From contig OZ281494.1 in assembly GCA_965637545.1 (NCBI GenBank), forward strand, positions 31,496,001-31,560,000: a stretch of 64,000 bases of DNA. The letters are read 5' to 3'. This stretch comes from Phallusia mammillata. Its lineage: Eukaryota. The translations under genes and the position numbers were made by a program. Under the pieces are notes generated by a model. That model worked only from the letters and a program-made list of their open reading frames with translations. It was not told the origin of the DNA and made no database searches. Position 1 is the stretch's first letter. Every line of letters starts with the position of its first letter. Of this stretch, positions 11,401-47,091 are shown piece after piece.

Positions 11401-14400
11401 TGCTACACGTGTATGTGGAAACGCGAAGAGAATCAATGCGTTCTGATCAGGTAAGGGACCTCCTTATTTTTCTATTCGAATAAGGTTTCACTATTTTTTA
11501 ACTTATTTCACCTAACTGATAGGATCATCAGTGTCTTATTCAAATAGAACTGAAAATCTTTAAAAAAGCTGTGGATGACTTCAAAGTTTTTAGCCTGTAT
11601 TAAATTAACTATTAAGTTTGCTTGCTTTATGAAGGCAAATAGCTTTTTTTACAGAATTGCATTACAGCGAAAGTTGAAGGTTTAAATGTGCGGTGTTTCC
11701 AAATTTGCATTCTATTCCTAATTACCTTAAATGCCAGGCTGCCTGTTTATTAACATATCTCTGGGTTGTATGCAGGGTTATATATATTAAGGCCTGATAG
11801 AGTGGTATTATTGTTGTAGTAAGGTCGTATATTCAGTCATGGGAAAGTGTCAAGTAAAGGTCGCGCTTACTGAAATACTAGATGCCGGATGGCGTGTGCT
11901 ATTATAACGGCGTTGATGTAAATAACGCATTGTTTGAACAGTCATTGTTTGGATTCGAATACACACTCGTTTGAATAAAGCAATATAATGAATGATCGAA
12001 CGCAATGGTTCTCAACTGGTGACCTATATTCCGCAGGACGTTAACTATATTTGGCGATAAACTGGAAATATAATTAAAAATAGTTTATTGAATACTTAAT
12101 GCTAAAAAAACTTATCCAATTTGTTGACCATATATTGTTAGTTTTCAGTTATTTGATATCACTCCTCGAAATTCTGTATTGAAGGAATATATTTTAAGCC
12201 AATATGCTTGTTGAGGTTGCTGTCTTTATCGTTACTTTACAATGGACTGGTCCTCGATATTATGTTAATATTAGTGATGGTCTATGGCCTAAAACGAGTT
12301 GAGAACCACTGACCTGACGAAAATCCAAATATGCAATACATGGGCTAAAAGCCATTAGTGCCATGCACTTTGGGTCTCAAAATTTGTCAGTTTGCAAATA
12401 CCTTATTAAGAAGTTTTCTCTCTTTGGTTTTCTTTTTGCTGTAATTAATAGGGACGTTGTAACGTGCCGGGTAACGTTCTTTATTGGTTGTCATGACGAC
12501 AGGCCACGTTCTGGTTATTTACGTGACGTTGCGCGTTATTAAAACACGATCCTTGCCCGGTTTTGCTAATTTTATTACTTTGGAACATCATTCGGCAAAA
12601 TTCTCAAAAAATCGTGTTAATTTTAACTTGTCGTTCCAAGATTGAAAGCCAACTAAAAATACAACTTTTATAATGCGTTTGTTTGTGTCAATTCTGAGTG
12701 AATTGTTGTTTTCGTTAATTTTACTTCTTTCGAATATCGTTCAGCAAAATTCTCGAAAAAAACGTGGTAATGAAAGAACGTATTTTCAAATGCGTTTCCA
12801 AGATTAACTAAAAATGCAACTTTATAATGTGTGTGTATATGTCAACTTTGAGTAAGTTTGTGGTTTTTGCTCAGCTCGTTAAGTGAAATGTTATACCGCA
12901 GCTGGACGTTTAACAATTTCCCCTGTTTTGTTGGTTCACCTAACAAGATTAAGTTGTTATGGTTTAAAAAGATTGAACACTTTGGCGCTTTGCGATGATT
13001 GATTGAAAATTACCGTCACATTTACCTAACTTTACATACGATATGGAAATTATTTTATTGCTTTAAATGACATTGACTTCGCTAATTCTTCAAAATAAGT
13101 TTATAATGTCAAAATACTGGCTTAAAAAGTTGATGATAATAAGAAAATTAGGGTTCAAAACTGGTAAAATGAAAACTTGTGAACCCTAAAATTCTCTATT
13201 TTTCCAACACATAGCCCAATCAACTCGTGTTTTCAAAAGTGTCATTTTCGTGCGTCAAAACGTCTTAACGTTTCTGAACGAATTAACCCTTGCTCAGGTA
13301 TAATAATTGAGGTTGTCAAAATTAACAAAATGTTTACACGTTTTGAAATTTTAAACCACCTTGGGTATGCCAAGACTGTATTGGCTATTTGTAGGTATTT
13401 CAAATTATGGGATCAGGTTTGGAAACGTTATTTGTTCTAAACCTGTTAATTGGTTTAACACATGAACCGCAATGTTATTTTGTACACCGTAGAGAAATGT
13501 TTTAGCGCCCCAAAACCAAGCTAAATGGCGTTCGTTGGCAGTTTAAAAGATTAAGTTGTCAAGTTACAATTAATTTGTTTGACTAATTTCATTCAAAATT
13601 GTAACATGTTGACTCATGTTTGTTAAGACCACACTCTCGGGCTATTGGATACCAAAAACATGCGTAGAGAACCGATTAGCAGTGTATTTTAACGATTACT
13701 GTCACTCTCTGTCTTGTTAGCAATCGCAAATCCTCAACTTTTAAAAAAGTTGTCTTTTTCTCTAGAACGGATTATGTTTGACTGTGAGGTAATTTTTGCT
13801 GGCGCAGCAGAATTTTACTTCAACGAAAAAACGTCCGGGAAAAATTTTGCTGATAAAAAAAAAACTTCACCACCTAACTACACTTGACCCCTTAAATGTT
13901 GCTTATCATATATATTATACCATATGTTTATTTGCAGTTGCTCATATATTTACAAGTCATGCAAATGTAACTAATTTTGCAAACACTTTTGCGCATAGTG
14001 AAGCTACCAAGGAGGTCATCAAGTCATCTGTGTTCATAAATAGATTGCACAACTCAAAAAACCTAAACGAAAAAACAGCCACGCTATTGGAGTAATGAAA
14101 ATAAACATTTTTTTCTTCAACCTTTTTGAGCAACCTCATGTTTTGTTTTATCGAACGTTCCGTGATGTCACATCAGGAAACAATACCGTACTTAAGGCGT
14201 GACGTGATTCCTTACGTCAATTAGTTACCCGTCAAGCCCTCGGAATGTTTATGTTACGTTGCTGCGTATGTTGATAGTATTCTCGGGCATGTAGGTTGAT
14301 CAATTCGTAACAATGAAAGTTTTGGGTCACTACACGGACCTGCTCGTGAGTCTAATGAGGAAAAACGGCCCAAATAGAAACTGATGTGGCACCTCATATC

Positions 14401-17400
14401 ACTTCTGATGGCATTACCATTTGCCGAAACGTTTGATTAATAAAGCATGTCGCATTTTAAATCTATTTAGGCCGTTATTTTCCTTGGAATAAATTAATGG
14501 AATTAATAAAAGTTTTGTAACTTTGTCCAGGCAACGCGAAACAAACATCAAGCCAAATTTTGTTTGCAATTTTTCTTCATCAAATTATTATTGTTGAACG
14601 GTTTCGTAAAACAACCAAGACACCAAAAAATATGGGTTATCAATTCAAGTGTCTTGTTGTTTAAATGATGCTTGGAGTGTTCTGGGTATATTCTGCCGTA
14701 GGATCGCAACCGAACGCACAACCTAACAGGGTACAGCCGGTTGCATATTGTGCTTGAACCAGCAGGTTCTAGACGAGATAAAGTACGCCATACGAAGTCG
14801 ATTACTGGGTAAATCAGAATTGATTTTCTTCTACCTTTACAATTAAACGTGCACGTAGTAAGGCGATTCTTGGCTTCCCAACCCTAACCATCTGCCAGCA
14901 GAAGAAACATTTCGGTGAAATTTCGTTTTTCTTTGACTCGTGTCAGAAACTGCGTCAATACAGGGACTTTCCCGGCATGGCTATCCTTTTTTGCATATGT
15001 GCCAACGCGAAAGCAGGTCTTCTCTGGAAATCACGGCATTCTGGGCTATCGTGACCTTATTATGACCTTAGGTAATTGGTCGTTGAATTAGCATTTGTTG
15101 GACCTGCTATAAGGATTTTAATTGACGGAAAGGTTAATCTGTATGAAGGACATCATTAGGATATGCGTCCAACCTTTATTTTCAAGCTGTGTTATCAATC
15201 CTAAATTGTTCAAAACTTGCAAATAGTTTAAAATAAGAAATTAAAACAAATTTTCAGCTCTAAGAATTAACGTCTGAACCAGATTGAGAATTTGTTAAAA
15301 AAACAAGCAATTTTAATGCATGTTGGTTCGTTACACAAAATTTCTAATTCAAATATACATAAATTATGTAATAAATGGCAAAGATTTTAAAAGGAAACAG
15401 AAAAAAACGTTTTTGTAGTTTGCCACTCTTCAAATATTTTAAAATTACCTAAAAATCTAAATTCACGTTTTCAATTTTTTTTACATTCATAAATCCACAT
15501 ATAAGTACGCCTAATTAGGTCAAAGTGTCACTCAATAGAACCAACACTTAACCTGATCGGCAAACCCCAACGGCCTACAGTTAAACCCATTTACCCATTC
15601 CATATACAGAACTGCTGTGCATACAAAAATCCTGCATTAACCTTCTTAACCTTTTCCATCTGTTCAGTGGGGAGAGTGGAGCCGGAAAAACGGAGACGAC
15701 CAAATTCATGCTCAGTTACCTGTCTCACGTCAGCAAAGCTTCGGGTAAAACCGAGTAAGTGCCGTCTGCCACTCGTCTGTGACGTAATTATAACCGGCGT
15801 GACGTAATTAGGCTATGTGTGAATTAGTTTTTAGGAATGAAAATGATAGCAGTGTGCTTACTGTGTAGCTTTTTTTTCAACGTTTTTTGAACATTTAAGT
15901 GTTGAAATGTCCTTTAGGCTTCCTTAAGTTGTGTTATTAATTAATGCATTAGTTTTAGTGTTTAAATGTCCTTTAAGCTTCCTTAAGTCGTGTTATAAAT
16001 TGATGCACTGGTTTTACCAAGATAATTCTATTTAGTGTATCATCAATGTAAACCTTATATCTTTCCCAGACCATCAAAGGAAAATGGTCGTTCGATTGAG
16101 CAGTCGATTTTGGAGAGCAGTCCATTACTGGAAGCCCTTGGGAACGCAAAGACAGTGTACAACAATAATTCCAGTCGATTTGGCAAATTTATCCAACTTC
16201 TGTTTAGCGAGGCTGGTCAGATCAAAGGAGCTCGGATTACAGACTGTATCCTTCTAATTGTTATTGATATATTTTAATGTATAATGTACAGAGGGAATTT
16301 TCTTTTTGACTTGTTTCCATTTTGAGTGCCTTTGCTAAACATTACCATAATTTGTTGAAATTTTAGACTCAACAACATAAAGATAAATAGGATTTCTTTT
16401 TAAAATCCTAAAAATGGATTGATTTATTCGATTTGCTAAACTGACGAGAAATTACTATAGCATTTGACGTTTTATACTAAAAGCACCACTGTTTATTTCG
16501 TTTTCCTTTACTCGAAGGCTTTTACTTTCATCCACAAATCAGATCTACTAGAAAAGGTTAGTTTTGCTTTTCAATTTATTTCTTATTCATTTACGTTAAA
16601 TACGTGAAATTCAGTTTTTATTGAACTTTTAAATGCGCTTGAATTCAAATTATTGCATTCTGTTCTGGAGCTTCAATAGTTTCTATAGCTTTAAACTGTA
16701 TAGCAAAGAGCGTTTTTATTGACCATTTAAATGGACTTAAATTCAAATATGTTCATTCTTGTCTAAAGCTTGAATAGCGTATGCGAATAAATTTTCAACT
16801 GCACCGAGGCTAACCATGGAAATTGTTTTACAGCACAGAGTTGTTCGTCAGAATCCCGGTGAAAGAAACTACCATATTTTCTACCAGCTCGTTCGTGGAT
16901 TATCTCAAGACGAAAGAGGTAAGAAAAGTTGACACCCGAAAGTTCGCGGGTTCGAATCCCATCGACACAAGTTTTTTAACATACAAACCACTAACGGACT
17001 GACATTTTATGTTTATTCACTGTGTTGGACCTTTTCTTTCAGTTAATAAACAACCAAGTCTTTATACTGTATTTTGGTGTAACGTATTTGCCTTGTTCAG
17101 TGTCCAAAACGACACAAGCTTACCAATCCAGATAAACGTTGCAAGAGTTTTTTTCAGAAATAATACCATTTACAATTGCTGAATAACCAATAAATTATAC
17201 CACCAGTTTGGAAACGTGTATCTCCATGTTAAAATCTGTTAGCTTTTTTATATTAGAGAAATGTATTTCGCTATAAAAGCATAGTCAGTGTCTGTAAACT
17301 AACTAACCAATAAATTTGTTTGATTAATAATAATTGGACTGCATCCCCTCAGACCAAAACTTAAAAAAACTGATGTATTAGAATTATAATCAGACTTGCG

Positions 17401-20400: not shown

Positions 20401-23400
20401 TAGACATAAAAATAATTTGTAGGTAGTGTTTTTTCATGTGTTTTTAAGATGGAAAAATTAGATAGATTTTATCATTGTAGTCAGCGATTACCTTTTCATT
20501 TGTTTTAAAAAAGATATAAGAGATATGCAAGTCAATATATTTACTTTATTGTTACGTTTTGGCATTTACCAAAGCATTGGTTTACGTTGAACAACTTCTA
20601 GATTTGAAAAACAAATTCCAAACGTTGCAGTAAATTGTAAACAAAACATGCAGCCCATGAGCAAATTACAAATGTAAATTCTCCACAATGTCGTAAATTG
20701 AAAACAACATTTGCTTTATGCAAATTCCCTGGCAATTAAATTCCAATTAAACTACCATTCAAGACCATCATTTATCCAAATTAATTTGTGCCTAATTGGC
20801 TGCCAAACTACATGAATTGATTTGTAGTGATTTCACTAACACTGGCATTTACATCAGATACCAAGCTATTGCTCTATTAGTGCATGCTATTATTGTGTTG
20901 TGTATATATTTGTGTGATTAATTTCCGCACTGTTCAATTCGACTTGGCCACCTGCCACGTTGTAGCATGTGATGTGGAAGTACTTTTTCCTGTGTGGTTT
21001 CTGCTGTGTGGTGTATCACAATGCAGTTGGTGTTTTGTTCAAAATATGCCAATATGTCACTTGCGTTTTCTGAGCGGGTTCCGGGCACGCTTGATGCGGT
21101 AAACTGTAACAAACCTACATGGTAAATCACTTTGTTAACAAAATCGTGAAATTCGTTGTGTCTGACTGCACGAAGCTTAAGAACGTAGCTTTTTTGACAG
21201 CACATAGTGACATAAACTTGATTCATGTTTCTATAGTTTCTTCTTATTTATTGACGAATATAACGATTCAAATAGACGTAAAAAGCGTCATGCCTTATTA
21301 TGCAAACGTTTCGGCAAATGCTCATGCCATCATTAGTAATATGAGAGGCTACAATGGTTATATTTGTAACAAAATATAGTTAATGTCTTTTACTGTTAGC
21401 ACATCCAACCAAACACTCACTACGAAGTGCAAATAATAAAACAGCGTTTGTTACTTGAACATAAATTCATTAGGCTACTGGGTCAGCCCTGCAGCGTTCA
21501 TACAGACCAGCGATCACGGCATACACAGTCCCCCAAAAACTTGATTCAGTGCAACGCGTTTGATTAGCCTGGCGTACTATGATCAAAAATATTAATGGTA
21601 AGCTTGAAATGATGTTGACATAAATTGACTTTGCAATTTACAGTGGTGGACCAAACATCTCAGCTTCTCGGAATTGACAGTGAAAGACTTGAAGCTGTGA
21701 TGAAGGAGAAAACGATGAAGTTGCGGGGAGAAAATATCACATCGCCACAGAGTGTTGATCAGGTTAGGGGTGCAACGACTTACGGAAAATGTTTTTGCAC
21801 TGTATTTTAATGGAATATTTCACATTAATTTTAAGTAAAGCAGGTTATAACTGGTTGCATTGTAATTTGCTGAATACTAACGCAATATTTGCTGTTTAAG
21901 TAAAATAGATATTTTTTAAAGAGCTTATAATGAAAACAGTATGATAAATTAAAGATGATTTGCTCTACTTTTTATTTTTTTAGGTGGCTTTGAGCAAAAC
22001 TTAAAATTGAAAAAAAATGTTTTTTGTTATTGGAGCACCCTAAACTTTCACATTTGCGAAGTTAACAAACTATTTGCAGAGATTGCTCTTTAGAACCCCA
22101 ATCAACATTTTTAACTTTTCATAAAAGAACAATGAGTATGACTTCACATAAAAGTAAACCCTGGACGTCATTGAGCGAACGCAAATTAGTTTGAACGCTG
22201 CTGACTTAATGACTCAGCAAATTACGGAATTGCGTCACCGTGACTCGCCAATTGTTGAATAGTTCTCACGCACAGTAAACCATGGAACCTAAAAAAACAA
22301 AATTGAAAAAAGAAAACAGTCTTGTAATTAAAACCGTAAAATGAGCTAAGATACTTTGTTGCGCTGTCGATAAAGTGTGACTTTGATAAACGTTTACAAT
22401 TAAACCCAAACAACCAATTATTTTAACACCATATATCATACCCCTTTGGTGCTTCGTGCTTCTAGAAGGTACAGGGGGTAAATATATAAGTATTTTGATT
22501 TTCTTCGTAATGTTTTGGTGGAATTACCCCAAACGAGGTTAGGAACTGCTTAAATTTACGACTTACGGCAGTTTATACTCATTGTATGTTTTATTGCGTA
22601 TACCATATACGGTTCATATTTTTGCAGCGAAAAAAACCCAACAGCTTTTTTCTGTGTTTAAATGAACCTTGCCTAATTTAAAAGTCACACATTGGCGCGT
22701 TTAAACTTTACTGCTCTGTGATTGGCAGGCTTGCGACTCACGTGACTCCCTTTCCATGGCGCTATACTCTCAATTGTTTCGTTGGATTATCTCCAGAGTA
22801 AACCACAGAATCAAGGGGCCGGATGATTTTCATTTTATCGGCATCTTGGATATCTTCGGTTTCGAAAACTTTGCCGTAAGTATATGCACTTTATAACAAC
22901 TGTGCCTGTTAAATAATGTTCCGACTGGATGTAGATTGCGTGTATAAATGTCGTGTGCTTTAAAACATTTCAACATTAATGTAAAAACTTTAAGCCAATA
23001 AATTATTTGATGCAGACAGTGCACACTGTTTTGAACTATATTTCAGCCTTACCAAAAATGGTTGCTGTGTTTTAGGTGCAAGACTAACAACTTTAAAGTT
23101 ACCATTTTTTTTAGGTGAACCGATTTGAACAGTTCTGCATTAACTTTGCCAACGAGAAGCTTCAGGAGTTTTTCAACCGTCACATTTTCAGTTTGGAACA
23201 AATTGAATATAACAAGTCAGTTGCTACAATATATTAGAATTTAGAGTTACACTGAGGGGCACTAAAAAGTGTATTCTGCATCATATGGAACAAAAATCCA
23301 ACATCTAAATTATTTTTTATTTGAACGCCAATTACAGTTAAAATTATGGTGTAAAACCAGATTGTTTTTGTTAAAAAATCCAACAAAACTGTAATACAAC

Positions 23401-38663: not shown

Positions 38664-41600
38664 ATTTGATAAATATGCATCTTATGCTTCTTAAAATACA
38701 TGTGTAAATAAAATAAGTCATTCAAGACGGTTTAAGCCTTGTAGTAACTAAAATGACTAAATGACAATTCATGCAGAGAGTTCAAGGAAAAATACAGTTA
38801 ACCAGTCTCAAAAGTATATATTCTTGTGTTCAAATCTCGCCCCAGCTAAAGTACACTGCCATAAAGCTTTTTAAACAAAATGTCACATATACGATGTTTA
38901 TCAACAGAAACAGACCGGTTTATGGGAGATTGTGGTTTACGGACGCAAACACGCTCTTCGTCTCAGTACAGAAGTGGAGGAAGATGCGAATATATGGAGT
39001 AGTGAGATACAAGCCATGATAGATGGACAACCACAAATTGTCACCAAGACCAAAGTGCTCATGGACAAAGTTAAGGTAAGTTGAAAAGACTTTGTTTCTA
39101 ATACAAAACAATTTCATATCTGGTTAAAAGATTTAAAAATTTGCCAGGACCTCCGTGTTTTTTCGTCGACGAATGACAGCCATAAGTTTAAAAATGCAAA
39201 TATCCGTTACACTTCCGTTAAGAAGATTCAAATAAAAAAACATATTAGGCTGGAAAACGAATATGAACCACATTTACTACTCGCTATTGTGTACTGCTAA
39301 GCATAAAAAGAGCACGTTGAAAATTATATAAATTTTAATATTTCAAAAATTACTTTCAAGCAAGAATATAGAGTAGAAATTAAACCTGGTTTGCAAATTC
39401 TCTTTTTGCAGAATGCCCACGACAGTGAAAAGGAGATTGACCTGATTTACAAGAGGAATCCAATTTTCCGTCAAACCAATCAACCTTTAAGATCTCCGTT
39501 GTTATCACTGCCATATGAACAGGTAATCATTTATACCCTATTTATGTATTTATTGATGCCCATTGCTAGAGCGCCAGCCCCAGTGAAGCTGTCATGGATT
39601 CGAATCTCGCCGCTTGCCAGAATTTTCTACCCATGTCTTGCCATATGTAGGGATGCTTAAGAGGCCGGATTCGGTATAAAGCCTCTAATAGACCTAGAGA
39701 CTGTGTTTTAAATCCTGGTGTGTCGTTATAGCTAGTTAGCATTGGCGATTTAGGGCTGATCCCAGTTTTGAACATAGATTCATAATCTATTTGTTGAAAA
39801 CTTTTGCAGTTGTGGCTCATATGTCAAAATTTAAAAATTATTCTTTTCAAAATTTTAGGCTGTAGATTTTGCTCCCCAATTTTTTAATTGGTCTACTCGC
39901 AGGTGCCCTCGCGTGACGACCATTACACGTTACGTGATGAGGCGGTTCGAATCTTCAACGTTTTGCTGCAGATGGAAGAACAGACCTTCGGTAACATGCG
40001 AGAGGAGGCTCAGGCGCTGCAGGTAAACGCTTGATATTTTTGCATAAGTTTGCCCGTGTTTTGCCGATGATATTATCTCACCACGGTGAAAGGAGTAAAT
40101 GTTTTAACGATTCCTATGGCCTTTCTTGGGTGAAACAGAAGCGGTGTGACTTACATTGGTCAGCTTTTTTTTTAAAATCAGCCTTATTACTTATAGTGCA
40201 AGGACAAAAAACGAATGTAAAAGGTAGATCTACTAACACCACAACTCACTTGAGCCCAACATTTACTTAAATATCGCGATAGGTGGCGTAATGTGACAGC
40301 TAGAGAGGTGTTAGGGGAAACAAGTTTTTAAAAATTTTGCATTAGGAACTAAGTTTTAAAGTTGGTTTTATTGAATTTTAATTATAATACCCTACCTAAC
40401 CCAAATAGCCCTAACTGTCAGCATTTTTGAAGATATCGAAATTTAGCTAAATGCGTGGCTTATGTGTGGTATGGTGTTTGTAGATTTAAAAAAAAATATA
40501 TAAAATATTCAAAATATTCTGCTAACCACCCACAAAAGCTGCATGTCAGTGTTTATCAAGATTTAAAGTAAGATAAGTTCACTGTTTTATGTAAAAAATA
40601 GAAACAATAATTTCTGTACATCTTTGCATTCTTTGTATTCATATAATATGTACCATTCGGTTGCAGGCAATTCTAAGGGCATGTCATGGTTCCAAGCTGT
40701 TCCAGGACGAGCTATATCTGCAGCTGATAAAGCAGACAGCAGTTTACACTCTACAACTAACCACAGAGGAACAGATGGGCGATCAGCTACATGTTACTTC
40801 ATGTCCACATTATTGGCATCTGATAGCTTGTATGTGTTGCGCATATCATCCATCTAGGCCTGTTATGGCTTATTTGAAAACACATCTTGCCAGGTGAGTG
40901 TGTTGTTACGAATATTGATTTTCCGCAGTTAGTACAAATCTTATAGTTAATGTGGTGATCATTTTTAGGTTAGGGGTTTTGTTACTATTTTTGGTTTTGG
41001 GTATATTAACTATAAAATGATACCTTAACAAAAAAAAATCCGTACTGCAAAGAATCCGATTCAATTTTAAATATTTTGTTCTGTACTACCAAAGCCACAT
41101 GGAGCGCGTTTGTTCCAGAAATAAGGAAAGCAATTGCCAACAGAAAAATTCTAGTTAACTCTGCAAATGTCAACAAACAATATGCTACCATAAGCTCATA
41201 TTGGCATGAATATATTCTATTAGAATAAAAGGCCCTATGAAAACCACCACTATTTGTAGGATACATTGCAAACACTACATTTATTATGGGTCCTCTTCGC
41301 TGAAAGGACCCATTCGTTTCTTCTTGCCTAAAAATCATGTTCTTAAATGCCTTACAAAAAAACGGGACCCAATAAAAATAAAAAAGTTGCAAATACATGT
41401 CCGTTATATGGTTAGTATATGTGGTTATTCGTTATACAGCGTGTGATATATGATATATATCAGTGGTTCCCAACCGGGGAGGAATTTTATGAGTTCAGGG
41501 GAGGAATTTCATAAAAACTGCAAAAAAATACATTGGATATGTTACAGAATATTTTTGTGTATACATTATTATGTCCATTATAATTTGGACCCGGTTCACA

Positions 41601-44600
41601 TTTGGTAAAGGATTCTGAATGGACATCCCTAATTATAAGGTCTATTTCAAATTGCTTTAATTTTTTATGTTATATTTGATTTTCGTCGTATGGGGAGGAA
41701 TGAATAGTTCGAAAATGGGCGAAGGGAGGAATGTAACAAAAAAGGTTGGGAACCACTGATATATATGATAGGAAAACGTCTTTTTGGTTGTACATTAGGT
41801 TAATGCAAGTTCGGCTTTTGCAAATTTATGAAACCTTTATTTTTTTTCAGGGTCCAAGAACGTTTTCCAGAAACTCTCGGTGCCGCTTATGCTGAGTTTG
41901 GCGAAAACGCGCTGAGTCAGCAGACGTCACGACGGCGTGAAATGGTTCCATCGATTGCCGAGATTTGCGCAGTGCTCGAAATGAGGGACCTGGTCACTGT
42001 GATAAACTGCTACGGTGGAGCGACCTGCGATATTTACATTAATTCTTTTACCACAGCCGGCAAGGTACGAAAACATGGCTGAAATGTATTGAGAATTTGC
42101 AAATATCTTACGTAGCGCGCAGGCCAATACTGATTTTTTTAACAATTGAATTAAAAAACACATCGTGGATTTAAAAATTACTTGCATTTTTTTAAACGTT
42201 GAAAAAAGAATACCTGAATGGATATGTTTATAAATCATAAAAAAATGTTTTACGCGGCGATGAGGACTGGTTTTAGTAACAAACTTAAAATTAAGTGTTA
42301 GCTTTGCCTTGTACATCTGTATTTTGTCAACAAGTTCTAAATTTTAAACTTTAAAACTCTTAAACATCACATGAGAGTTGCAATCTGCGAAATAAACGAT
42401 TTGCAAAGCGCGTTGAATATTTTAACAGTTTTAAATGCATGTTAAAATTTAACAGAATTACCACATTTCCGTCCAAAATTATGATGTTTTAAATATGTCA
42501 CGCATTTTGATTCAGGTTGTCCAGAAATTGCGGCATGGAATGCATGTTGAAGGAAACAGAAATACTTTCGCTTTGTTCGAACACAGAGGACAAGTCGACA
42601 GAGCGATAGAACCAAGCACTTACCTCGCTGATGTTGTGGCCAAGTTTGAACAGTAAGTTTCGTTTCATTTCTACAGCTTTGTAGCTTGGATTCAACCAGT
42701 CAAATTTTGTAGCTAAGACATGTGGGAATTAAATGGATCGTTTGCATGAAATGCAGTGGTCGAAAATGAAATTTGTATTGCCTATTACAGACCAATCCTG
42801 ATAATGACATACCAGTCTATCGCATAATTTGTTTAATTGTATAGGGATGCTAAAACTGCTAGAAAAATCATCTGCTCAATCGCGAACTCTGTTTAATGGC
42901 AAAATAAGATTGGCAAATTGGTCATCGATAAACGAAAAAAAATGACAAAGTCTTAATTGTGCGAATTATGACACTTTTAAATACACGTTGCAAATTTTAT
43001 TGTTAAAAAGAGGACGGGATTCAAATTTTGTTCAAATACTTTTAAAAATTGATCTTTAGGCTACACACCACTAAATTATGTATAGAATCCCATACTTTTG
43101 TCACCACTATATTAAATTTCATTAAAAACAACAATAAACAAACATGCTTATTGGTGAACAGAATGAACTTGGAGCTTCAAGCGAGTCCAGATAACGGAGG
43201 AAAAGAGTCGGAATGGGTTTTCTACTTCAAACTCTACTGTGTGTTTGATCCGATCGACTCACAGGAAGACTCCATCGAATATCACTTTGTGTATGAAGAT
43301 GTAAGTTTTCTAATTTTCTAAAATTTCACAATGAACCTGTAACCGTTTAAAAGTGTAGTCACATCAGTTTTGCCAGAAAACTCTATTGGGGTGCAAATTA
43401 AGTTTTTTTTTGCATTGGTATTATATTAGGCTTGTGAAAATAGGTAGTTATTAAGTAGGTGTGAAAATAGATTGCTATTAAGAAAATGCAGATAACACTG
43501 ATGGATTTTTAGTTTTTGAAATCGATTTTTTTAACATTTTAGGTCCATGAGCAAGTTATTCAGGGACTTTACCCTGCTTCTGATGACGTATTGCGGGATT
43601 TTGCTGCACTCAGATTACAGTTTGCCGAAGGAAATTATCACCAAATTAATATCGAGTAAGTTTTATAGTTGTTAATAAACACCAAATCAAAATCAAAAAT
43701 GTAACTTTGCAAGGTAAATAGTTTTAGATTTACAAAATAAATCGTCTTTACATGAAATATGCAAACTTTTCTTGCGTTTATGACTTGTCAGATTTGGGTG
43801 CTACTATTAAGAATCCCAAATCCTGAATATTTGTGCCTGCCGGGCTGCAGTATTGTAATAAATTAATAGTGCAATAAATGCTACGTAAATTGCGTAACCT
43901 AAACCCAGTGGTTCCCAAACTTTTTTGTTGCGACGCCTGTGGAAAAGTTTTATGGACTTGCGACGCACCAGCAAATTTAATTAATGACAAAACTTGTTAT
44001 TAAAGTTGTGTTTATTGATACAACAACAAAAAGCCACGAAACGGAACTATTCTGCGACGCCCTTGGAAAATTGAAACGACGCACCAGGCCGTCTCGACGC
44101 ACAGTTTGAGAACTACTGCCTTAACCCTTAAACACTAACGTCACTGACAGACATGAAAACATAGTAAAAAATTTTTGGTTTTAACAATATTTTGTGTTTT
44201 TACGTTGTAGCACTGAGATTGGCAAGTATTATCCGCTTAACAAGCTTCTTTCGGCTTACGATATAACACACGAGAATGAGGATTTCTACTTCAAGAGGAC
44301 CGACTCATTTGGAGATGCAAATGCAAATGCAACACCATCCAAAAAGCGTTCAGTAAGTAGAACAGATCGCATACGCCCGAAATTTTTTTCTATTCTAATT
44401 TCTAATCTAGTGTGTATCCTGTTTGGTGTATTCATTTAATATTTCACTGAGATTTATAGAAATGTCTACTTTGACAGATTATGCAACTAAATCGAACAGT
44501 TATTCCTACAATCTTCTCTGTACATTATCTACAATCTTTCATACGTTTTATGCAATTTTCCATTTTTCCTACAAGTCTCATGTAAGGTTTCAGCAGATTT

Positions 44601-47091
44601 AAAGGTCCACCTATAAGCTATTCCCTACAACTAATAAAATATTGTACAGAACAAACAGGTCACAAAGTTTGTAAACGTTATGAGTACGTATAAATATAAA
44701 ATTTGATCAGACCAGGAAGTGATGACCCCCTTAGATCTAAAAACCCATTTCTCTAAAAAATATACACTATCTATCTATTATTATTATCCAGCATACATTT
44801 CCTACCATGTTGCATAACTTAAACATATTTTACAATCTCTCATTCGTTGTCCATAAACTTATACATACCTTGTTTTGTTGTAGGGTCTATGTTTCATTTT
44901 CCTCCTATTTGCATTTTTATTTGCTACTTGTCATGTGATAATTCATGATTATTTTTTTCCCAGGGTTCGAGTCTCTTCAACACATTCCGTAAGAGAGGAA
45001 TGAAGAAAGTTAAAGAAGAAGCAGAAAGCGACGACATGAAGAGGACTCTCTTTCTGGAGGAGTTGCAAGATGTAAAATCCAATGTCCTGGATCGCTGGAG
45101 AAGATTAAAAGGGATGCATGCTGAAGAAGCAGTGGTAAGACTTGCTGAAATTTGGACTAAACATAGCATACTAAACTTTCGGTTGTGGGTTGTAAAAACG
45201 AGGAAATTTTCAATTTTTGATAGAAAGTATGGTGTCACACAAAAGCATTTTTTCAGAAGTTAAATACATAACCTTGTCCTAAAAAGTGTATAAAACACTT
45301 AACTACTTTGAAAACTTTTCTTTACAATTTTGAATCAGTCTTCAGCTGCAAATTTTGTGTAGCTTCCTTACAATGCTGTTGTGAATTGTTTTATCTATAA
45401 GACCTCATTAGTGCAGTTGGTGACAAGACATTGGCCCTATAAGCTAGTATAGCTTTGCAGCCCTTCAGTTTGTTGGGAGTAACAGGCTTAAAATCCATGC
45501 TTAGCCAAATTTCGTGGGTGCCACAACTGAGCTTTAACCACAGCGGAGTTTAAAGTTGTAACATGTAGATTTTAGACCAGTGGTTCTCAAACTCGGTTTT
45601 CGGGGCCGCATGCGGCTCCCAACCACTTATTTTGCGGATCGCACCAGACCTCAGAAAACCACCAAACATTGCTATTTTAGTTTTAAAGTAATAATCTGTA
45701 GTGATTTTCTCCAGTGTTCGTTTTTTTGGCCGCTCCCAACACACTAAAAAAATACCATTTGGCCCCGACAATAAACAAGTTTGAGAACCACTGTTTTAGA
45801 CCATATATAAATACCGTTAAAAACTTACAACTTGTCGGTTTAAACTGAGTTTTTAAACAATAACGGCCCAAATAGACGTAAAAGAGACATGCTTAAACGG
45901 GTGTAACTAATGTGGCCCTTTATATCGCTGATGACTTGAGCATTTGCCGAAACGGTTGGACAATAAAGCATGTCGCTTTTTACGTCTATTTGGGCCGTTA
46001 TTTTCGTCATTAAACTTATAAACAGATCTCTATATAGTGTTCCACACATACTTTATTTTATCCCTTTCGTTGATTTACTTAATAAACTTGTTTTAGGTGG
46101 AATACGTCAACTTAGCCCGGCGTTGGCCCGGATACGGATCTTACCTTTTCAAAGTTGAAAACCATGACGCACAGTTCGGCCAAACCCTCCTATCTCTGGC
46201 CGTTTCCGCACAAGGAGCTACTGTGTTTAAACGAGGTCATCCACAGTCGTTGGATCATTTCTCCTACGAAAAGTAATGCTCCTAATTATAATGAGTTATT
46301 TTTTCTGTTAATGTTTTTACCAAGTACTATTAAAATATAACAGTGACACATGAAGTGGGCCCCGGCTCTCCCCTGGGGGCGTTTGCAATATCCAATGAAC
46401 AGAGGCGAAAAATGGGTAATAAATCTCGACAGTCATTCATAAGATAAACCGGAGTACAACGATAAATGAAATTTGGTCATATATGTCTTTTTTGTCTAAT
46501 ATAAGCAATTTGAAAAAAGTATTTAGATTTTTTTTGGTAAGATACTGAAGATGCCTATAGGTGAAATATGTGTATAAAACGGTGGATGACGTCCGCTAGT
46601 ATATGCGACTGTTCTCTCCAACCTTATACTGTGTCTCTGGTGACTTGTGATTAGATAATACACATAGTTCATATTTGGTGAAATGTTTTAGTACTATTGA
46701 CTACTTTTAACATGTAATCCGAAGTTTTTACACCGCTGGCGTGCATCAACCTCACACATTATCGTATTTTGATATGACGGAAGGCGTTTTTACATCAGCA
46801 AGCTGTTGCAACAGCCAGACAGAAAAAAGTTTAAGAAGCACTAAAATAGACACAGGAAAGAGGAAAAAAAACAAATACAGCAGTTTTTAATTTCCAATGT
46901 CGCAAACTGAAAAACAATCCTAAGTTTTCTATCTTTATTTCAGAATTCAATCTTTCGGTGCGAGCACTGCCAACGTTTTCCGCCTACAAACCGAATCTCG
47001 TGGAGACATCTCTTTCACAGCCGAGCAAGTCAACGAAATTGTGAAACTCATGCGCGCCTATGTCAATGCATTGTATCGACGAAAACATTGA
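5452..47091 (+). CDS. MYO10: Unconventional myosin-X (whole gene, 47 coding exons, about 2061 aa)
   Basis: All 47 AG/GT-bounded exons join in frame (6186 nt including stop). P-loop GESGAGKT, switch [10 protein letters not shown], switch [12 protein letters not shown] motifs, SAH, split-PH/PH/PH, MyTH4 and FERM appear in the class-X order. Confidence 0.96.
6138..6245 (+). CDS. MYO10: Myosin-X exon 2 (SH3-like)
   Basis: GGRVWLVNG...[13 protein letters not shown] bounded. Confidence 0.9.
7348..7643. mobile_element. Mutator (MULE)-type MITE
   Basis: About 53-bp near-perfect TIR starting GGTAGAGCTAC; perfect 9-bp TSD CAGGCAAAT. Confidence 0.85.
8488..8836. mobile_element. hAT (Buster/Charlie-type) MITE
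   Basis: CAGTGTTTCTTAACC...GGTTAAGAACCATCTA; 8-bp TSD CCTTAAAC. Confidence 0.75.
9002..9160 (+). CDS. MYO10: Myosin-X exon 3
   Basis: [30 protein letters not shown]. Confidence 0.93.
11263..11450 (+). CDS. MYO10: Myosin-X exon 4
   Basis: [14 protein letters not shown]...PPHVYAI...NQCVLIS. Confidence 0.95.
12003..12311. mobile_element. Older hAT MITE
   Basis: CAATGGTTCTCAACT...AGTTGAGAACCACTG; TSD not conserved. Confidence 0.6.
12575..12870. repeat. Tandem duplication, period about 150 bp
   Basis: TTC(G/A)GCAAAATTCTC...AACTAAAAAT(A/G)CAACTTT occurs twice. Confidence 0.75.
14353..14484 (+). mobile_element. Foldback element with internal hammerhead-like motif, copy A
   Basis: Inverted arms (...ACGGCCCAAATAG / CTATTTAGGCCGTTATTTTCC) enclose ATCA-CTTCTGA-T-GGCA-8 nt-TGCC-GAAA-C-GTT-TGAT. 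Confidence 0.7.
15668..15754 (+). CDS. MYO10: Myosin-X exon 5 (P-loop)
   Basis: [15 protein letters not shown]. Confidence 0.95.
15898..16015. repeat. Tandem duplication, period 59 bp
   Basis: AGTGTT(G/T)AAATGTCCTTTA(G/A)GCTTCCTTAAGT occurs twice. Confidence 0.85.
16070..16245 (+). CDS. MYO10: Myosin-X exon 6 (switch I)
   Basis: [30 protein letters not shown]; donor is GTATCCTT. Confidence 0.95.
16246..16542 (+). other. U12-type (minor spliceosome) GT-AG intron in MYO10
   Basis: 5' site GTATCCTTC; branch-site-like TTTCCTTTAC at 16502-16511; no strong polypyrimidine tract. Confidence 0.8.
16543..16556 (+). CDS. MYO10: Myosin-X exon 7 (14-nt microexon, YLLEK)
   Basis: AG|ATCTACTAGAAAAG|GTTAGT supplies the invariant myosin YLLEK and fixes the frame between exons 6 and 8. 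Confidence 0.92.
16834..16918 (+). CDS. MYO10: Myosin-X exon 8
   Basis: [19 protein letters not shown]. Confidence 0.95.
17489..17592 (+). CDS. MYO10: Myosin-X exon 9
   Basis: [17 protein letters not shown]. Confidence 0.94.
18378..18547. mobile_element. Tc1/pogo-type MITE
   Basis: TIR AGTAAACTTCGGTTAATCCGG / CCGGATTAATCGAGATTTACTG, TA-flanked; inverted copy at 31329-31485. Confidence 0.72.
18947..18984 (-). ncRNA. Near-intact hammerhead motif
   Basis: Minus strand: AAAA-CTGAAGA-T-GCT-AGTCA-GGC-GAAA-TGTTTA-TTTT; stem III weakened. Confidence 0.5.
19118..19160 (-). ncRNA. Hammerhead motif with G12A core change
   Basis: Minus strand: ATC-CTGATGA-ATGC-GTCCC-GTAT-GGGAC-ATC-AAAA-C-GTC-GGT. Confidence 0.65.
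19295..19460 (-). mobile_element. tRNA-derived SINE
   Basis: B-box GGTTCGAATCCC; body ends ...GGGCCTGGCATACC...TGATCA. Confidence 0.75.
19512..19641 (+). CDS. MYO10: Myosin-X exon 10
   Basis: [22 protein letters not shown]. Confidence 0.94.
21250..21372 (-). mobile_element. Same foldback/hammerhead family, copy B (one arm)
   Basis: Minus strand: CTAATGA-T-GGCA-TGAGCATT-TGCC-GAAA-C-GTT followed by the family arm. Confidence 0.7.
21644..21762 (+). CDS. MYO10: Myosin-X exon 11
   Basis: [29 protein letters not shown]. Confidence 0.94.
22729..22875 (+). CDS. MYO10: Myosin-X exon 12 (switch II)
   Basis: [17 protein letters not shown]...[12 protein letters not shown]. Confidence 0.95.
23115..23215 (+). 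CDS. MYO10: Myosin-X exon 13
   Basis: [31 protein letters not shown]. Confidence 0.95.
23642..23801 (+). CDS. MYO10: Myosin-X exon 14
   Basis: [22 protein letters not shown]...[10 protein letters not shown]. Confidence 0.95.
23912..23951 (+). ncRNA. Degenerate hammerhead motif
   Basis: TGCA-CTGATGA-TGGTT...AATGAT-TAAA-C-GTC-TGCG; G12 lost and stem II mismatched. Confidence 0.5.
24811..24984. mobile_element. hAT MITE, CAGTGGTGGGATTC family
   Basis: TIR CAGTGGTGG; similar over its length to 27717-27900; TSD 6/8 match. Confidence 0.8.
25114..25182 (+). CDS. MYO10: Myosin-X exon 15
   Basis: [20 protein letters not shown]. Confidence 0.95.
25580..25662 (+). CDS. MYO10: Myosin-X exon 16
   Basis: [20 protein letters not shown]. 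Confidence 0.95.
25959..26064 (+). CDS. MYO10: Myosin-X exon 17 (loop 2)
   Basis: CDLIYDMFE...VTASGHFK. Confidence 0.92.
26153..26233 (+). CDS. MYO10: Myosin-X exon 18
   Basis: [23 protein letters not shown]. Confidence 0.95.
26339..26519. mobile_element. Foldback MITE with about 54-bp inverted arms
   Basis: TTCAAAAACTAAAATTATCAACTATGACGTCACAAAAGCATGAC... and its near-perfect reverse complement. Confidence 0.75.
26681..26805 (+). CDS. MYO10: Myosin-X exon 19
   Basis: [25 protein letters not shown]; weak donor GTCCTT. Confidence 0.93.
27419..27530 (+). CDS. MYO10: Myosin-X exon 20 (converter)
   Basis: YGMICAL...NWRLGHTK. Confidence 0.93.
27717..27900. mobile_element. hAT MITE, CAGTGGTGGGATTC family
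   Basis: Perfect 8-bp TSD ACTAGAGT. Confidence 0.85.
28050..28211 (+). CDS. MYO10: Myosin-X exon 21 (IQ1, start of IQ2)
   Basis: AFVKE...[16 protein letters not shown]...HAQRFVR. Confidence 0.92.
28958..29155 (+). CDS. MYO10: Myosin-X exon 22 (end of IQ2, IQ3, IQ4)
   Basis: GFVARRKF...[14 protein letters not shown]...[15 protein letters not shown]. Confidence 0.92.
29579..29656 (+). CDS. MYO10: Myosin-X exon 23 (SAH)
   Basis: [26 protein letters not shown]. Confidence 0.88.
29752..29826 (+). CDS. MYO10: Myosin-X exon 24 (SAH)
   Basis: [25 protein letters not shown]. Confidence 0.88.
30145..30291 (+). CDS. MYO10: Myosin-X exon 25 (proline-rich insert)
   Basis: [13 protein letters not shown]...[13 protein letters not shown]...DGEH; phase 0/0. 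Confidence 0.82.
30875..31105 (+). CDS. MYO10: Myosin-X exon 26 (coiled coil)
   Basis: ...[21 protein letters not shown]...; the 3' boundary could be 31102 or 31105. Confidence 0.82.
31329..31485. mobile_element. Tc1/pogo-type MITE (inverted copy of 18378-18547)
   Basis: Shares ACAAAACTTGAGGTACAAATGATT; TIR CAGTAAACC...GGTTTACTG. Confidence 0.72.
31561..32178 (+). mobile_element. Internally deleted Buster/Charlie/SPIN-type hAT transposon with BED zinc-finger fragment
   Basis: TIR CAGTGGTTCT(C/T)AAA, perfect TSD AATTAAAT; 31910-32011 reads [34 protein letters not shown]. Confidence 0.88.
32353..32448 (+). CDS. MYO10: Myosin-X exon 27 (acidic region)
   Basis: [20 protein letters not shown]; phase 0/0. 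Confidence 0.8.
33258..33344 (+). CDS. MYO10: Myosin-X exon 28
   Basis: [15 protein letters not shown]; phase 0/0. Confidence 0.8.
33743..33830 (+). CDS. MYO10: Myosin-X exon 29
   Basis: [10 protein letters not shown]...SDMDD; phase 0/1. Confidence 0.8.
34047..34498. mobile_element. Degenerate hAT MITE
   Basis: CCTGGGTCACCAAAC...GTTTTGTGACCCCTG with GCGGGCCG subterminal motifs; no TSD. Confidence 0.5.
34581..34730 (+). mobile_element. tRNA-derived SINE (full head)
   Basis: A-box-like GCTGAGTTGGTAGA, B-box GGTTCGAACTC, tail TGGCGTACGATGATCA. Confidence 0.7.
34795..34928 (+). CDS. MYO10: Myosin-X exon 30 (PEST, start of PH1)
   Basis: [12 protein letters not shown]...[10 protein letters not shown]. 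Confidence 0.9.
35088..35214 (+). mobile_element. tRNA-derived SINE
   Basis: GGGTTCGAATCCCACCGCAGGCTAGATTTTT; same family. Confidence 0.75.
35282..35451 (+). CDS. MYO10: Myosin-X exon 31 (PH1N/PH2)
   Basis: [14 protein letters not shown]...[16 protein letters not shown]. Confidence 0.94.
36258..36385 (-). mobile_element. tRNA-derived SINE (head and body)
   Basis: Minus strand GTAGCTTAGTTGATAGAG...GGGTCGAATCCCACC. Confidence 0.72.
36478..36551 (-). mobile_element. 5'-truncated SINE tail flanked by a 14-bp direct repeat
   Basis: TACTCAGTTATTGA at 36478 and 36538 flanks 46 bp of SINE 3' end. Confidence 0.7.
36567..36770 (+). CDS. MYO10: Myosin-X exon 32 (PH2)
   Basis: [15 protein letters not shown]...[11 protein letters not shown]. 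Confidence 0.94.
36775..37170. repeat. (TG)n microsatellites in a TG-rich low-complexity tract
   Basis: Pure GT runs near 36849-36866 and 37042-37068 within about 400 bp of TG/TTTG-rich sequence. Confidence 0.9.
37266..37399 (+). CDS. MYO10: Myosin-X exon 33
   Basis: [20 protein letters not shown]. Confidence 0.92.
37720..37850 (+). CDS. MYO10: Myosin-X exon 34 (PH1C)
   Basis: [30 protein letters not shown]. Confidence 0.94.
37992..38195 (+). CDS. MYO10: Myosin-X exon 35 (PH3)
   Basis: QGWMLKT...RRWFVL...[12 protein letters not shown]. Confidence 0.94.
38610..38665. repeat. (AAAT)14 microsatellite
   Basis: Perfect tetranucleotide run. Confidence 0.95.
38908..39075 (+). CDS. MYO10: Myosin-X exon 36
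   Basis: [17 protein letters not shown]...WSSEIQ. Confidence 0.94.
39412..39522 (+). CDS. MYO10: Myosin-X exon 37
   Basis: [24 protein letters not shown]. Confidence 0.94.
39565..39694 (+). mobile_element. tRNA-derived SINE (diverged)
   Basis: GGATTCGAATCTC...CTTGCCATATG...GATTCGGTATAAAGCC. Confidence 0.68.
39903..40022 (+). CDS. MYO10: Myosin-X exon 38 (MyTH4)
   Basis: [18 protein letters not shown]. Confidence 0.92.
40223..40487. mobile_element. Diverged relative of the 7348 MULE MITE
   Basis: Starts GGTAGATCTACTAACACC; interior is the reverse complement of 7400-7610 (CGATAGGTGGCGTAA etc.). Confidence 0.65.
40667..40893 (+). CDS. MYO10: Myosin-X exon 39 (MyTH4)
   Basis: [13 protein letters not shown]...[14 protein letters not shown]. 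Confidence 0.94.
41461..41758. mobile_element. hAT MITE
   Basis: CAGTGGTTCCCAACC...GGTTGGGAACCACTG; TSD ATATATAT. Confidence 0.85.
41851..42064 (+). CDS. MYO10: Myosin-X exon 40 (MyTH4/FERM)
   Basis: [11 protein letters not shown]...INSFTTAG. Confidence 0.94.
42516..42652 (+). CDS. MYO10: Myosin-X exon 41 (FERM)
   Basis: RNTFALFE...ADVVAKFE. Confidence 0.94.
43162..43300 (+). CDS. MYO10: Myosin-X exon 42 (FERM)
   Basis: [12 protein letters not shown]...[10 protein letters not shown]. Confidence 0.94.
43543..43655 (+). CDS. MYO10: Myosin-X exon 43 (FERM)
   Basis: [10 protein letters not shown]...AALRLQF. Confidence 0.94.
43906..44118. mobile_element. hAT MITE
   Basis: CAGTGGTTCCCAAAC...GTTTGAGAACTACTG; TSD CCTAAACC/CCTTAACC; internal GCGACGC repeats. 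Confidence 0.8.
44211..44352 (+). CDS. MYO10: Myosin-X exon 44
   Basis: YYPLNKLL...TPSKKRS. Confidence 0.88.
44964..45134 (+). CDS. MYO10: Myosin-X exon 45
   Basis: [18 protein letters not shown]. Confidence 0.92.
45578..45793. mobile_element. hAT MITE
   Basis: CAGTGGTTCTCAAAC...GTTTGAGAACCACTG; perfect TSD TTTTAGAC. Confidence 0.87.
45859..46013 (+). mobile_element. Same foldback/hammerhead family, copy C
   Basis: About 35-40-bp near-perfect inverted arms AATAACGGCCCAAATAGACGTAAAA...GCATGTCGCTTTTTACGTCTATTTGGGCCGTTATT around CTGATGA...TGCC-GAAAC. Confidence 0.75.
46097..46272 (+). CDS. MYO10: Myosin-X exon 46
   Basis: [12 protein letters not shown]...FSYE. Confidence 0.94.
46542..46575 (+). 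ncRNA. Degenerate hammerhead motif
   Basis: ATA-CTGAAGA-T-GCC-TATA-GGT-GAAA-TAT-GTG-TAT; cleavage triplet has H=G. Confidence 0.45.
46944..47091 (+). CDS. MYO10: Myosin-X exon 47 (terminal)
   Basis: IQSFGA...[17 protein letters not shown]. Confidence 0.94.

What the first reader, a model, noticed from the sequence alone, without database searches (positions are those of the whole stretch)
14353..46013. A small foldback element family that carries a hammerhead ribozyme between long inverted arms
Three copies (14353-14484 +, 21250-21372 -, 45859-46013 +) align. Their consensus is a roughly 50-bp arm (TAATGACGAAAATAACGGCCCAAATAGACGTAAAAAGCGACATGCTTTA), a short loop, and the reverse-complement arm. 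The loop consensus is a complete minimal hammerhead: ATCA-CTGATGA-T-GGCA-TGAGCATT-TGCC-GAAA-C-GTT-TGAT, followed by AATAAA. Each copy is broken in a different way (A: CTTCTGA core; B: G5A; C: stem II deletion), so the ancestor had an intact ribozyme. As RNA this would be a rod-like hairpin of about 150-170 nt capped by a self-cleaving motif. It may be a non-autonomous Penelope derivative with inverted pseudo-LTRs, or a retrozyme/viroid-like element. I do not recognise it as a described family.
Basis: partly seen in the sequence, partly recalled or inferred. Interest (0 to 1): 0.88.

Follow-up and report, generated by a model that had tools for sequence, protein, structure and literature searches.

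The report
Truncated Penelope retrotransposon ends with hammerheads
The three hammerhead-bearing "foldback" repeats are real, but they are old, broken-off 3' ends of an ordinary Penelope-like retrotransposon, whose insertions are known to leave such head-to-head copies and to carry this minimal ribozyme, so this is not a new kind of element.

Summary
Three related copies lie at the stated places. Each has a differently damaged hammerhead core, and the genome-wide majority sequence has an intact one (at least 1,289 matches within 3 mismatches, against 0 for the control).

The repeat is the last 110-180 nt of the 3' untranslated end of a canonical Penelope-like element (PLE). About 250 nt upstream of the hammerhead, longer copies end an ORF with a reverse-transcriptase YVDD motif and a GIY-YIG/CCHH endonuclease.

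The hammerhead is the helix-III-less "min-HHR" already described for metazoan PLEs:
- an extra base after CUGAUGA;
- a G10.1-C11.1 pair;
- a palindromic ACGU in place of helix III.

Five PLE families in this genome show compensatory changes in helices I and II.

The foldback is not a discrete element. In 40 sampled copies:
- half were solo 5'-truncated ends and half were head-to-head pairs, with junctions that vary between copies;
- all 19 foldbacks scored carry a 30-nt "tail" on exactly one outer end;
- 24 have target-site duplications of 8-14 bp (0 of 40 in the control).

This is the published PLE insertion signature. Tandem, retrozyme-like dimers are almost absent (one in the genome within the spacings searched). 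RNA data were uninformative.

Other follow-ups of this scan reached the same reading on other pieces of this genome. Low interest: a new member of a known kind.

The parts
14328..14379 (-). Copy A, inverted (antisense) arm: the decayed 30-nt PLE tail plus the last ~25 nt of the element end
   Evidence: Local alignment to the reverse complement of a natural family copy; sequence read.
14379..14508 (+). Copy A, sense 5'-truncated PLE 3' end. The dead hammerhead is at 14396-14436 (core CUUCUGA). A candidate 9-bp target duplication lies at 14316-14324 and 14509-14517.
   Evidence: blastn against the natural copy, positions 1197-1295, 84.6% identity; alignment and duplication search.
21227..21352 (-). 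Copy B, solo 5'-truncated PLE 3' end with no inverted arm. The dead hammerhead is at 21302-21342 (core CUAAUGA, G5A). A decayed tail-like stretch is at 21227-21247.
   Evidence: blastn 21247-21352, 83% identity; sequence read.
45859..45895 (-). Copy C, inverted arm (antisense copy of the element end, without the tail)
   Evidence: Self-complementarity to 45966-46013; coordinates.
45894..46043 (+). Copy C, sense 5'-truncated PLE 3' end. The dead hammerhead is at 45922-45959 (5' strand of helix II deleted, ACGG instead of ACGU). The element end is 45966-46013 and the one-sided 30-nt tail is 46014-46043.
   Evidence: blastn against the natural copy, positions 1186-1333, 86.9% identity.

Best explanation
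The three repeats are dead, heavily 5'-truncated insertions of one family of canonical (endonuclease-bearing) Penelope-like retrotransposons.

Shown here:
- The repeat is the last 110-180 nt of the element's 3' untranslated end.
- That end contains a helix-III-less minimal hammerhead about 250 nt after the stop codon of an RT/GIY-YIG ORF.
- Genomic insertions are either solo truncated ends or two truncated ends joined head to head at variable points. A 30-nt tail sits on exactly one outer end, and target duplications of variable length flank the insertion.

Inferred from published PLE biochemistry (PMC11167929):
- The element's endonuclease cuts both target strands.
- Reverse transcription is primed from both strands on element RNA, starting at either of two adjacent internal sites. 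This gives the optional tail.
- Both cDNAs usually stop within the first 100-250 nt and are then joined, which makes the foldback.

Inferred from PMC4209133:
- The hammerhead works only when two copies pair through the ACGU palindrome, for example in a transcript that spans two element ends, cutting after GUU to process element RNA.

The window's copies have lost the core and do nothing. The hairpin shape is a scar of insertion, not a designed RNA rod.
For: Family size and intact core:
- 2,130 first-look candidates for copy C.
- 1,289 core matches against 0 for the control.

Continuity with a PLE body:
- Class-b copies run upstream into shared sequence.
- L043:4615-5712 is a 365-aa ORF with a YVDD motif and the string VVY..YIGET..R..EH.
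- That ORF is 47% identical to residues 417-748 of a 748-aa open frame of a sister family.
- RVT_1 scores above Pfam's cutoff in the sister ORFs.
- The GIY-YIG and CCHH residues are invariant across three families.
- L047 extends to about residue 118 of the sister frame.

Hammerhead:
- All four min-HHR hallmarks listed in PMC4209133 are present.
- Sister PLE families carry their own min-HHR about 150 nt after the stop codon.
- Across five families, 86% of helix cells pair, against 32-50% when the partners are slid. Six pairs change on both sides, and helix II is 100% paired.

Insertion signature in 40 copies sampled by perfect core:
- 20 solo and 20 head-to-head, with 5' ends spread over 150 nt.
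- Exact flanking repeats of 8 bp or more in 24 of 40, against 0 of 40 in the shifted control.
- Exactly one tail in all 19 foldbacks scored.
- Among the listed perfect hits, 8 close pairs are all head to head and none is tail to tail.

Literature: describe each of these features for PLEs.
Against: - No intact full-length copy of this particular family was found. The RT region has only 16 candidates, all partial. The source of the many young-looking ends is therefore not identified.
- Profile tools do not call the endonuclease in this family's own ORF. It is only sub-threshold in a sister family (20.7 against 22.6 bits), and the match to a solved GIY-YIG nuclease is weak (E = 0.075).
- Rfam's hammerhead models do not score even intact copies.
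- Helix I is only 3 bp in the majority sequence, so catalytic activity is doubtful.
- No cleavage or expression evidence was obtained.
Confidence: 0.9

Rival explanations
1. The short hammerhead-bearing units are a non-autonomous, retrozyme-like element. Short RNAs, possibly cut out by the ribozyme and circularised, would be copied in trans by a PLE enzyme. They would not be failed, 5'-truncated copies of the full element.
For: - 3' ends far outnumber coding parts: 1,289 or more cores, against 233 candidates for the endonuclease region and 16 for the RT region.
- One locus (L082) has two sense copies 144 nt apart next to an inverted one.
- A 2026 preprint (10.64898/2026.07.22.740005) derives animal retrozymes from PLE pLTRs.
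Against: - There is no discrete 5' end. The 5' ends of the sense copies spread from position 1068 to 1218 of the reference copy, and some copies run on into the ORF.
- Only one tandem dimer exists genome-wide at 124-154 nt spacing, and none at 154-184 nt.
- No 5' end lies at the predicted cleavage site; all sampled copies start upstream of the ribozyme. This partly follows from sampling by intact core.
- The window copies are single and 7-24 kb apart.
Confidence: 0.07
2. A DNA-level foldback or MITE-type transposon whose loop only happens to resemble a hammerhead.
For: Inverted arms and flanking direct repeats are present in many copies.
Against: - Flanking repeats vary from 8 to 14 bp or more.
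- Arms are unequal, and the inner ends differ in every copy.
- Half of the copies have no second arm.
- One outer end carries an extra 30 nt.
- The sequence is continuous with an RT/GIY-YIG ORF.
- The hammerhead helices covary among PLE families.
Confidence: 0.01
3. The motif is kept in PLE ends for a reason other than self-cleavage, for example as a fold recognised by the element's own protein. The 'ribozyme' of this family would never cut.
For: - Helix I is only 3 bp and there is no helix III.
- Published min-HHRs cleave poorly in vitro (PMC4209133).
- Core mutants did not affect insertion in vitro, and no RNA-seq ends were found at the cut site in the anole element (PMC11167929).
- In foldback transcripts the rod buries the site.
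Against: - The catalytic boxes CUGANGA and GAAA are invariant, while the helices covary across five families. That is the pattern expected for an active hammerhead.
- The ACGU palindrome needed for dimer formation is conserved in all five.
Confidence: 0.15

Closest known systems
Minimal hammerhead ribozymes (min-HHR) of metazoan Penelope-like elements (Cervera and de la Pena 2014, PMC4209133)
   Same: - Type I topology with no helix III hairpin.
- CUGAUGA and GAAA boxes.
- One extra base between positions 9 and 10.1.
- G10.1-C11.1 pair.
- Palindromic 15.2-16.2, so that two copies can build helix III.
- Location in the terminal repeat region of a PLE.
- Thousands of mostly solitary copies per genome, some as pairs on opposite strands 100-700 bp apart.
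   Different: Helix II is 4 bp with an 8-nt loop here, against 7-8 bp in the Schistosoma families. Helix I is only 3 bp in the majority sequence, against 4-5 bp. Activity was not tested.
Canonical EN+ Penelope-like elements (Penelope/Poseidon, Neptune, Nematis clades) and their insertion architecture (Craig et al. 2021, PMC8557442; Frangieh et al. 2024, PMC11167929)
   Same: - RT followed by a C-terminal GIY-YIG endonuclease with a CCHH motif.
- Strong 5' truncation.
- An inverted 5'-truncated copy abutting the sense copy.
- A 30-nt tail on one end only.
- Target duplications of variable length.
- No poly(A) tail.
   Different: No intact full-length copy of this family was found. The clade was not assigned, because no phylogeny was made. 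Tandem pLTR arrangements are rare for the short copies.
Animal non-LTR retrozymes (tandem hammerhead repeats giving small circular RNAs)
   Same: They carry a type I hammerhead that needs a second copy to act. They are thought to derive from PLE pLTRs and to be copied by PLE enzymes.
   Different: Retrozymes are tandem arrays with one ribozyme per unit and produce circular RNA. This family is dispersed as single or head-to-head copies, with only one tandem dimer in the genome in the range searched. No circular RNA evidence was obtained.

Membership tests
Penelope-like element, canonical EN+ type | Reverse transcriptase domain in the same element | tested here: met
   - The ORF in L043 has a YVDD motif.
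- It aligns at 47% identity to residues 417-748 of a sister 748-aa frame, whose RVT_1 hit (33.8 bits) passes the 29.6-bit cutoff.
- Its own partial RT scores only 15.2 bits.
- L047 extends the homology back to about residue 118.
Penelope-like element, canonical EN+ type | C-terminal GIY-YIG endonuclease with CCHH motif | tested here: met
   Met by motif: the string VVY..YIGET..R..EH..E..N plus C, C, C, H, H are invariant in a three-family alignment. Profile support is weak. Pfam GIY-YIG scores 20.7 bits, below the 22.6 cutoff, in a sister family only, and gives nothing for this family. The match to T4 endonuclease II (2wsh) has E = 0.075.
Penelope-like element, canonical EN+ type | 5'-truncated insertions with an adjacent inverted or tandem truncated copy (pseudo-LTR) | tested here: met
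   20 of 40 sampled copies are head-to-head pairs with variable junctions, and one has an added tandem copy. The 8 close pairs among the listed perfect hits are all head to head.
Penelope-like element, canonical EN+ type | Optional 30-40 bp tail present at only one end of an insertion | tested here: met
   All 19 foldbacks scored carry the 30-nt tail on exactly one outer end. Of the 21 copies scored as solo, 5 have it and 16 lack it.
Penelope-like element, canonical EN+ type | Target-site duplication from staggered cleavage | tested here: met
   Exact flanking repeats of 8 bp or more in 24 of 40 copies, against 0 of 40 in a shifted control; median 9 against 5. Examples of 13-16 bp are seen.
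Penelope-like element, canonical EN+ type | Intact autonomous full-length copy of this same family in the genome | tested here: inconclusive
   Only 16 candidates for the RT region, all partial or diverged.
min-HHR of metazoan PLEs | CUGANGA and GAAA catalytic boxes in type I order, with a cleavable NUH site | tested here: met
   The majority sequence reads CUGAUGA ... GAAA-CG-UU. There are 1,289 genomic matches against 0 for the control, and 83 perfect copies in the loci held. All three window copies are mutated.
min-HHR of metazoan PLEs | Extra base between positions 9 and 10.1, G10.1-C11.1 pair, palindromic 15.2-16.2, no helix III hairpin | tested here: met
   All are present in this family and in four other PLE families of the genome. 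The criteria are taken from PMC4209133.
min-HHR of metazoan PLEs | Helices I and II supported by compensatory change | tested here: met
   On the five-family alignment A4, 86% of cells pair against 32-50% when slid, 6 of 10 pairs change on both sides, and helix II is 100% paired. The sample is small. Helix I of this family is only 3 bp.
min-HHR of metazoan PLEs | Self-cleavage, as a dimer | not testable with these tools
   Needs in vitro transcription. The RNA runs were contigs of uncertain kind and cannot show ends.
Rfam hammerhead families (type I, II, III, HH9, HH10) | Score at or above the family gathering threshold | tested here: not met
   No hammerhead hit at gathering in the window. 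None at E up to 10 on copy C or on intact copies in L010 and L059. This is expected, because those models require a helix III hairpin.
Animal non-LTR retrozyme | Tandem repeats, each unit with a hammerhead, giving circular RNA | tested here: not met
   The window copies are single and 7-24 kb apart. Genome-wide there is 1 tandem pair at 124-154 nt spacing and 0 at 154-184 nt. Circular RNA could not be tested.
MITE or foldback DNA transposon | Defined terminal inverted repeats and a fixed-length target duplication | tested here: not met
   Arms are unequal and variable, half of the copies lack one arm, duplications range from 8 to 14 bp or more, and the tail is one-sided.

The most novel reading that the evidence does not exclude
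This PLE family may survive mainly as short hammerhead-bearing 3' units that are copied in trans, as a dispersed, non-tandem counterpart of animal retrozymes. The great excess of ends over RT regions and the lack of an intact parent would then reflect a parasitic mini-element, not failed full-length copying. Rare tandem loci such as L082 would release a 144-nt RNA.
Probability: 0.08. Interest if true: 0.35.

Novelty: new member of a known kind. Interest (0 to 1): 0.12.

Why it matters
It matters little beyond annotation. It shows that hammerhead "foldbacks" scattered through this genome, in introns and intergenic DNA, are scars of Penelope-like retrotransposition and should be masked as such. 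They should not be reported as new ribozyme genes or viroid-like elements.

The family does give a clean, countable example of the PLE insertion signature: a one-sided tail in all 19 foldbacks scored, head-to-head joining and variable target duplications. This agrees with the two-strand priming and two-start-site model proposed from in vitro work on the anole element.

Tried and rejected
- Rfam at gathering and at permissive thresholds found no hammerhead, even in intact copies. This is a limit of the models and not evidence against the motif.
- Pfam on the family's own 365-aa ORF gave nothing at 0.01 and only a sub-threshold RVT_1 hit at E up to 10. The PDB sequence search with the sister ORF gave nothing.
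- The sequencing-run search found no run on record as RNA. Four small runs of guessed RNA type were laid on L082. Their contigs cover only the repeat, with many different flanks. They show no ends, strand or circular joints, so expression and cleavage remain untested.
The covariation test therefore rests on five families.
Shorter versions ran.
- A first reference copy (L045) carried a 14-nt deletion that made a false pile-up of 5' ends at one position. It was replaced by L044.
- A discrete foldback master, a SINE-like fixed 5' end and a MITE were each considered and rejected on the junction, 5'-end and duplication data.

Full report
**1. The observation**

They align with each other at 73% mean column identity. 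Each has two parts. One is a roughly 30-nt stretch that matches a hammerhead core with one hairpin. The other is a conserved roughly 50-nt stretch ending in ...CATTAA.

In copies A and C, the reverse complement of that last stretch stands upstream, which gives a foldback. Copy B has no such upstream arm.

- A reads CUUCUGA instead of CUGAUGA.
- B reads CUAAUGA.
- C has lost the 5' strand of helix II, and its ACGU has become ACGG.

Rfam finds no hammerhead in the window at gathering threshold, nor at E up to 10 on copy C.

**2. Genome-wide picture**

The window lies at C1:31,496,001-31,560,000 of a 240-Mb assembly. A search with copy C gave 2,130 first-look candidates.

The common sequence of the family has an intact core. 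The 32-nt string from CUGAUGA to the GUU site occurs 650 + 639 times within three mismatches, against none for the reversed control. The first 100 places listed are all perfect.

Two classes of copy appeared at once. One class is foldbacks. The other is copies that match only the ribozyme side and run on upstream into further shared sequence.

**3. What lies upstream**

Two such copies share about 900 bp upstream. Reading them shows a coding region that ends about 250 nt before the hammerhead.

- In L043 the open frame (4615-5712, 365 aa) has a YVDD reverse-transcriptase motif. Near its end it has VVYRLKC-CG-TYIGETRRNL-R-EH.
- It is 47% identical to residues 417-748 of a 748-aa open frame of a sister family in the same genome. 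A longer, frameshifted copy (L047) reaches back to about residue 118 of that frame.
- The sister frames pass Pfam's RVT_1 cutoff. One gives a sub-threshold GIY-YIG hit of 20.7 bits against a cutoff of 22.6.
- A three-family alignment shows the GIY-YIG residues and a C-C-C-H-H set invariant. A profile of that alignment weakly finds T4 endonuclease II, a GIY-YIG nuclease, at E = 0.075.
- Pfam does not call the family's own ORF, so the endonuclease assignment rests mainly on motifs.

RT followed by a C-terminal GIY-YIG/CCHH nuclease is the architecture of canonical Penelope-like elements (PMC8557442).

**4. The ribozyme**

Cervera and de la Pena (PMC4209133) defined a minimal hammerhead in the terminal repeats of metazoan PLEs. 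It has:
- no helix III hairpin;
- an extra base between positions 9 and 10.1;
- a G10.1-C11.1 pair;
- palindromic 15.2-16.2, so that two copies build helix III together.

The family here has all four: CUGAUGA-U-GGCA-loop-UGCC-GAAA-CG-UU.

Sister PLE families carry their own versions about 150 nt after the stop codon. A fifth version stands in the window itself at 63764-63811.

On an alignment of the five versions:
- 86% of helix cells pair, against 32-50% when partners are slid;
- six of ten pairs change on both sides;
- helix II is always paired;
- the catalytic boxes are invariant.

The sample is small, but the pattern is the one expected for a real hammerhead. Rfam's models miss even the intact copies, as expected for a motif without helix III.

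Helix I of this family is only 3 bp in the majority sequence, so activity may be low. Published min-HHRs cut poorly in vitro.

**5. The foldback**

I sampled 40 copies on contig C1 that have a perfect core and mapped them to a natural long copy.

- Twenty are solo 5'-truncated ends. Twenty are two truncated ends joined head to head.
- The 5' ends of the sense copies spread over about 150 nt. The inner ends of the inverted arms spread as widely. No junction recurs, except in one duplicated locus.
- Exact flanking repeats of 8-14 bp occur in 24 of 40, against 0 of 40 in a shifted control. Longer ones, of 13-16 bp, are seen.
- A 30-nt extension (the sequence at window 46014-46043) is found on exactly one outer end in all 19 foldbacks scored. 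Of the 21 copies scored as solo, 5 have it at the 3' end and 16 lack it.
- Among the listed perfect hits, all eight close pairs are head to head.

These are the published hallmarks of PLE insertions: strong 5' truncation, an adjacent inverted truncated copy, and a 30-40 bp tail on one side (PMC8557442). In vitro, the anole PLE enzyme cuts and extends both target strands and starts reverse transcription at two adjacent internal sites. The interval between those sites is the tail (PMC11167929).

The foldback is thus a scar of two-strand priming and not a mobile hairpin.

Folding an intact foldback as RNA gives a perfect rod (-121.9 kcal/mol, z = -18). That rod pairs over the GAAA box, the cleavage site and helix I, so the rod would hinder the ribozyme and not present it. 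Copy C folds as a shorter rod with the damaged ribozyme region in the loop.

**6. Retrozyme test**

Tandem dimers are nearly absent. There is one place in the genome at 124-154 nt spacing (the L082 locus) and none at 154-184 nt. Four head-to-head pairs with both cores intact occur in a single 30-nt spacing window.

The RT region of this family has only 16 candidates, all partial. That compares with 233 for the endonuclease region and more than a thousand ends. The excess fits severe 5' truncation. It does not exclude copying of short RNAs in trans, and I keep that as the minor, more novel reading.

**7. RNA**

No run on record as RNA holds the stretch. Contigs of four small runs of guessed RNA type cover only the repeat part of L082, each with different flanks. 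They cannot show ends, strand or circles. Expression and cleavage are untested.

**8. The window copies**

Only these three copies of the family, and no PLE coding sequence, lie in the window. They are 83-87% identical to the reference copy. They share a CGTCA variant of the end where most copies read CACCA, and none has a clean target duplication except perhaps A. They are old and inert.

**9. Verdict**

- The Penelope link and the hammerhead are right.
- The ideas of a separate foldback family, a viroid-like rod and an undescribed kind are not supported.
- Other follow-ups of this scan reached the same reading on other pieces of this genome. I did not rely on them.
- I did not test their label "sea squirt" for the organism.

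Noticed in passing
window 63764-63811 (+): An apparently intact min-HHR of a different PLE family. It has a 6-bp helix I (AUUGCU/AGCAAU), core CUGAAGA, a GCCC/GGGC helix II and a GUC site. It is close to the hammerhead behind the 845-aa PLE frame in L059.
   Followed up: partly
L043:3399-4307 (-), i.e. G000:C8 about 14,949,700-14,950,600: An actin-like open frame (302 aa, with an actin C-terminal motif) lies antisense between the 273-bp inverted arm and the truncated PLE body of one insertion. It may be a host mRNA picked up by template switching during PLE reverse transcription, or simply an insertion into an actin pseudogene.
   Followed up: no
L082:438-851 (G000:C1:23,256,937-23,257,350): One inverted copy plus two sense copies in tandem 144 nt apart, all with perfect cores. 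It is the only tandem dimer found genome-wide in the spacing ranges searched, and a natural substrate for a dimer-cleavage test.
   Followed up: partly
L058:2448-4289 (-) and 5206-7449 (+): Two long copies of a sister PLE family (614-aa and 748-aa open frames) lie head to head, each followed by its own min-HHR. A run of N lies between them.
   Followed up: no
window 36307-36378 (-): A tRNA-like sequence, the only Rfam hit in the window at gathering threshold (34.8 bits against a cutoff of 29). It has several non-standard pairs in the acceptor stem and could be a tRNA pseudogene or a tRNA-derived repeat.
   Followed up: no
L094 and L095 (G000:C1:34,357,100-34,358,300 and 34,379,800-34,381,000): Two foldback copies 22.7 kb apart share the same structure and the same flanking repeat. 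They therefore mark a segmental duplication, not two insertions.
   Followed up: no
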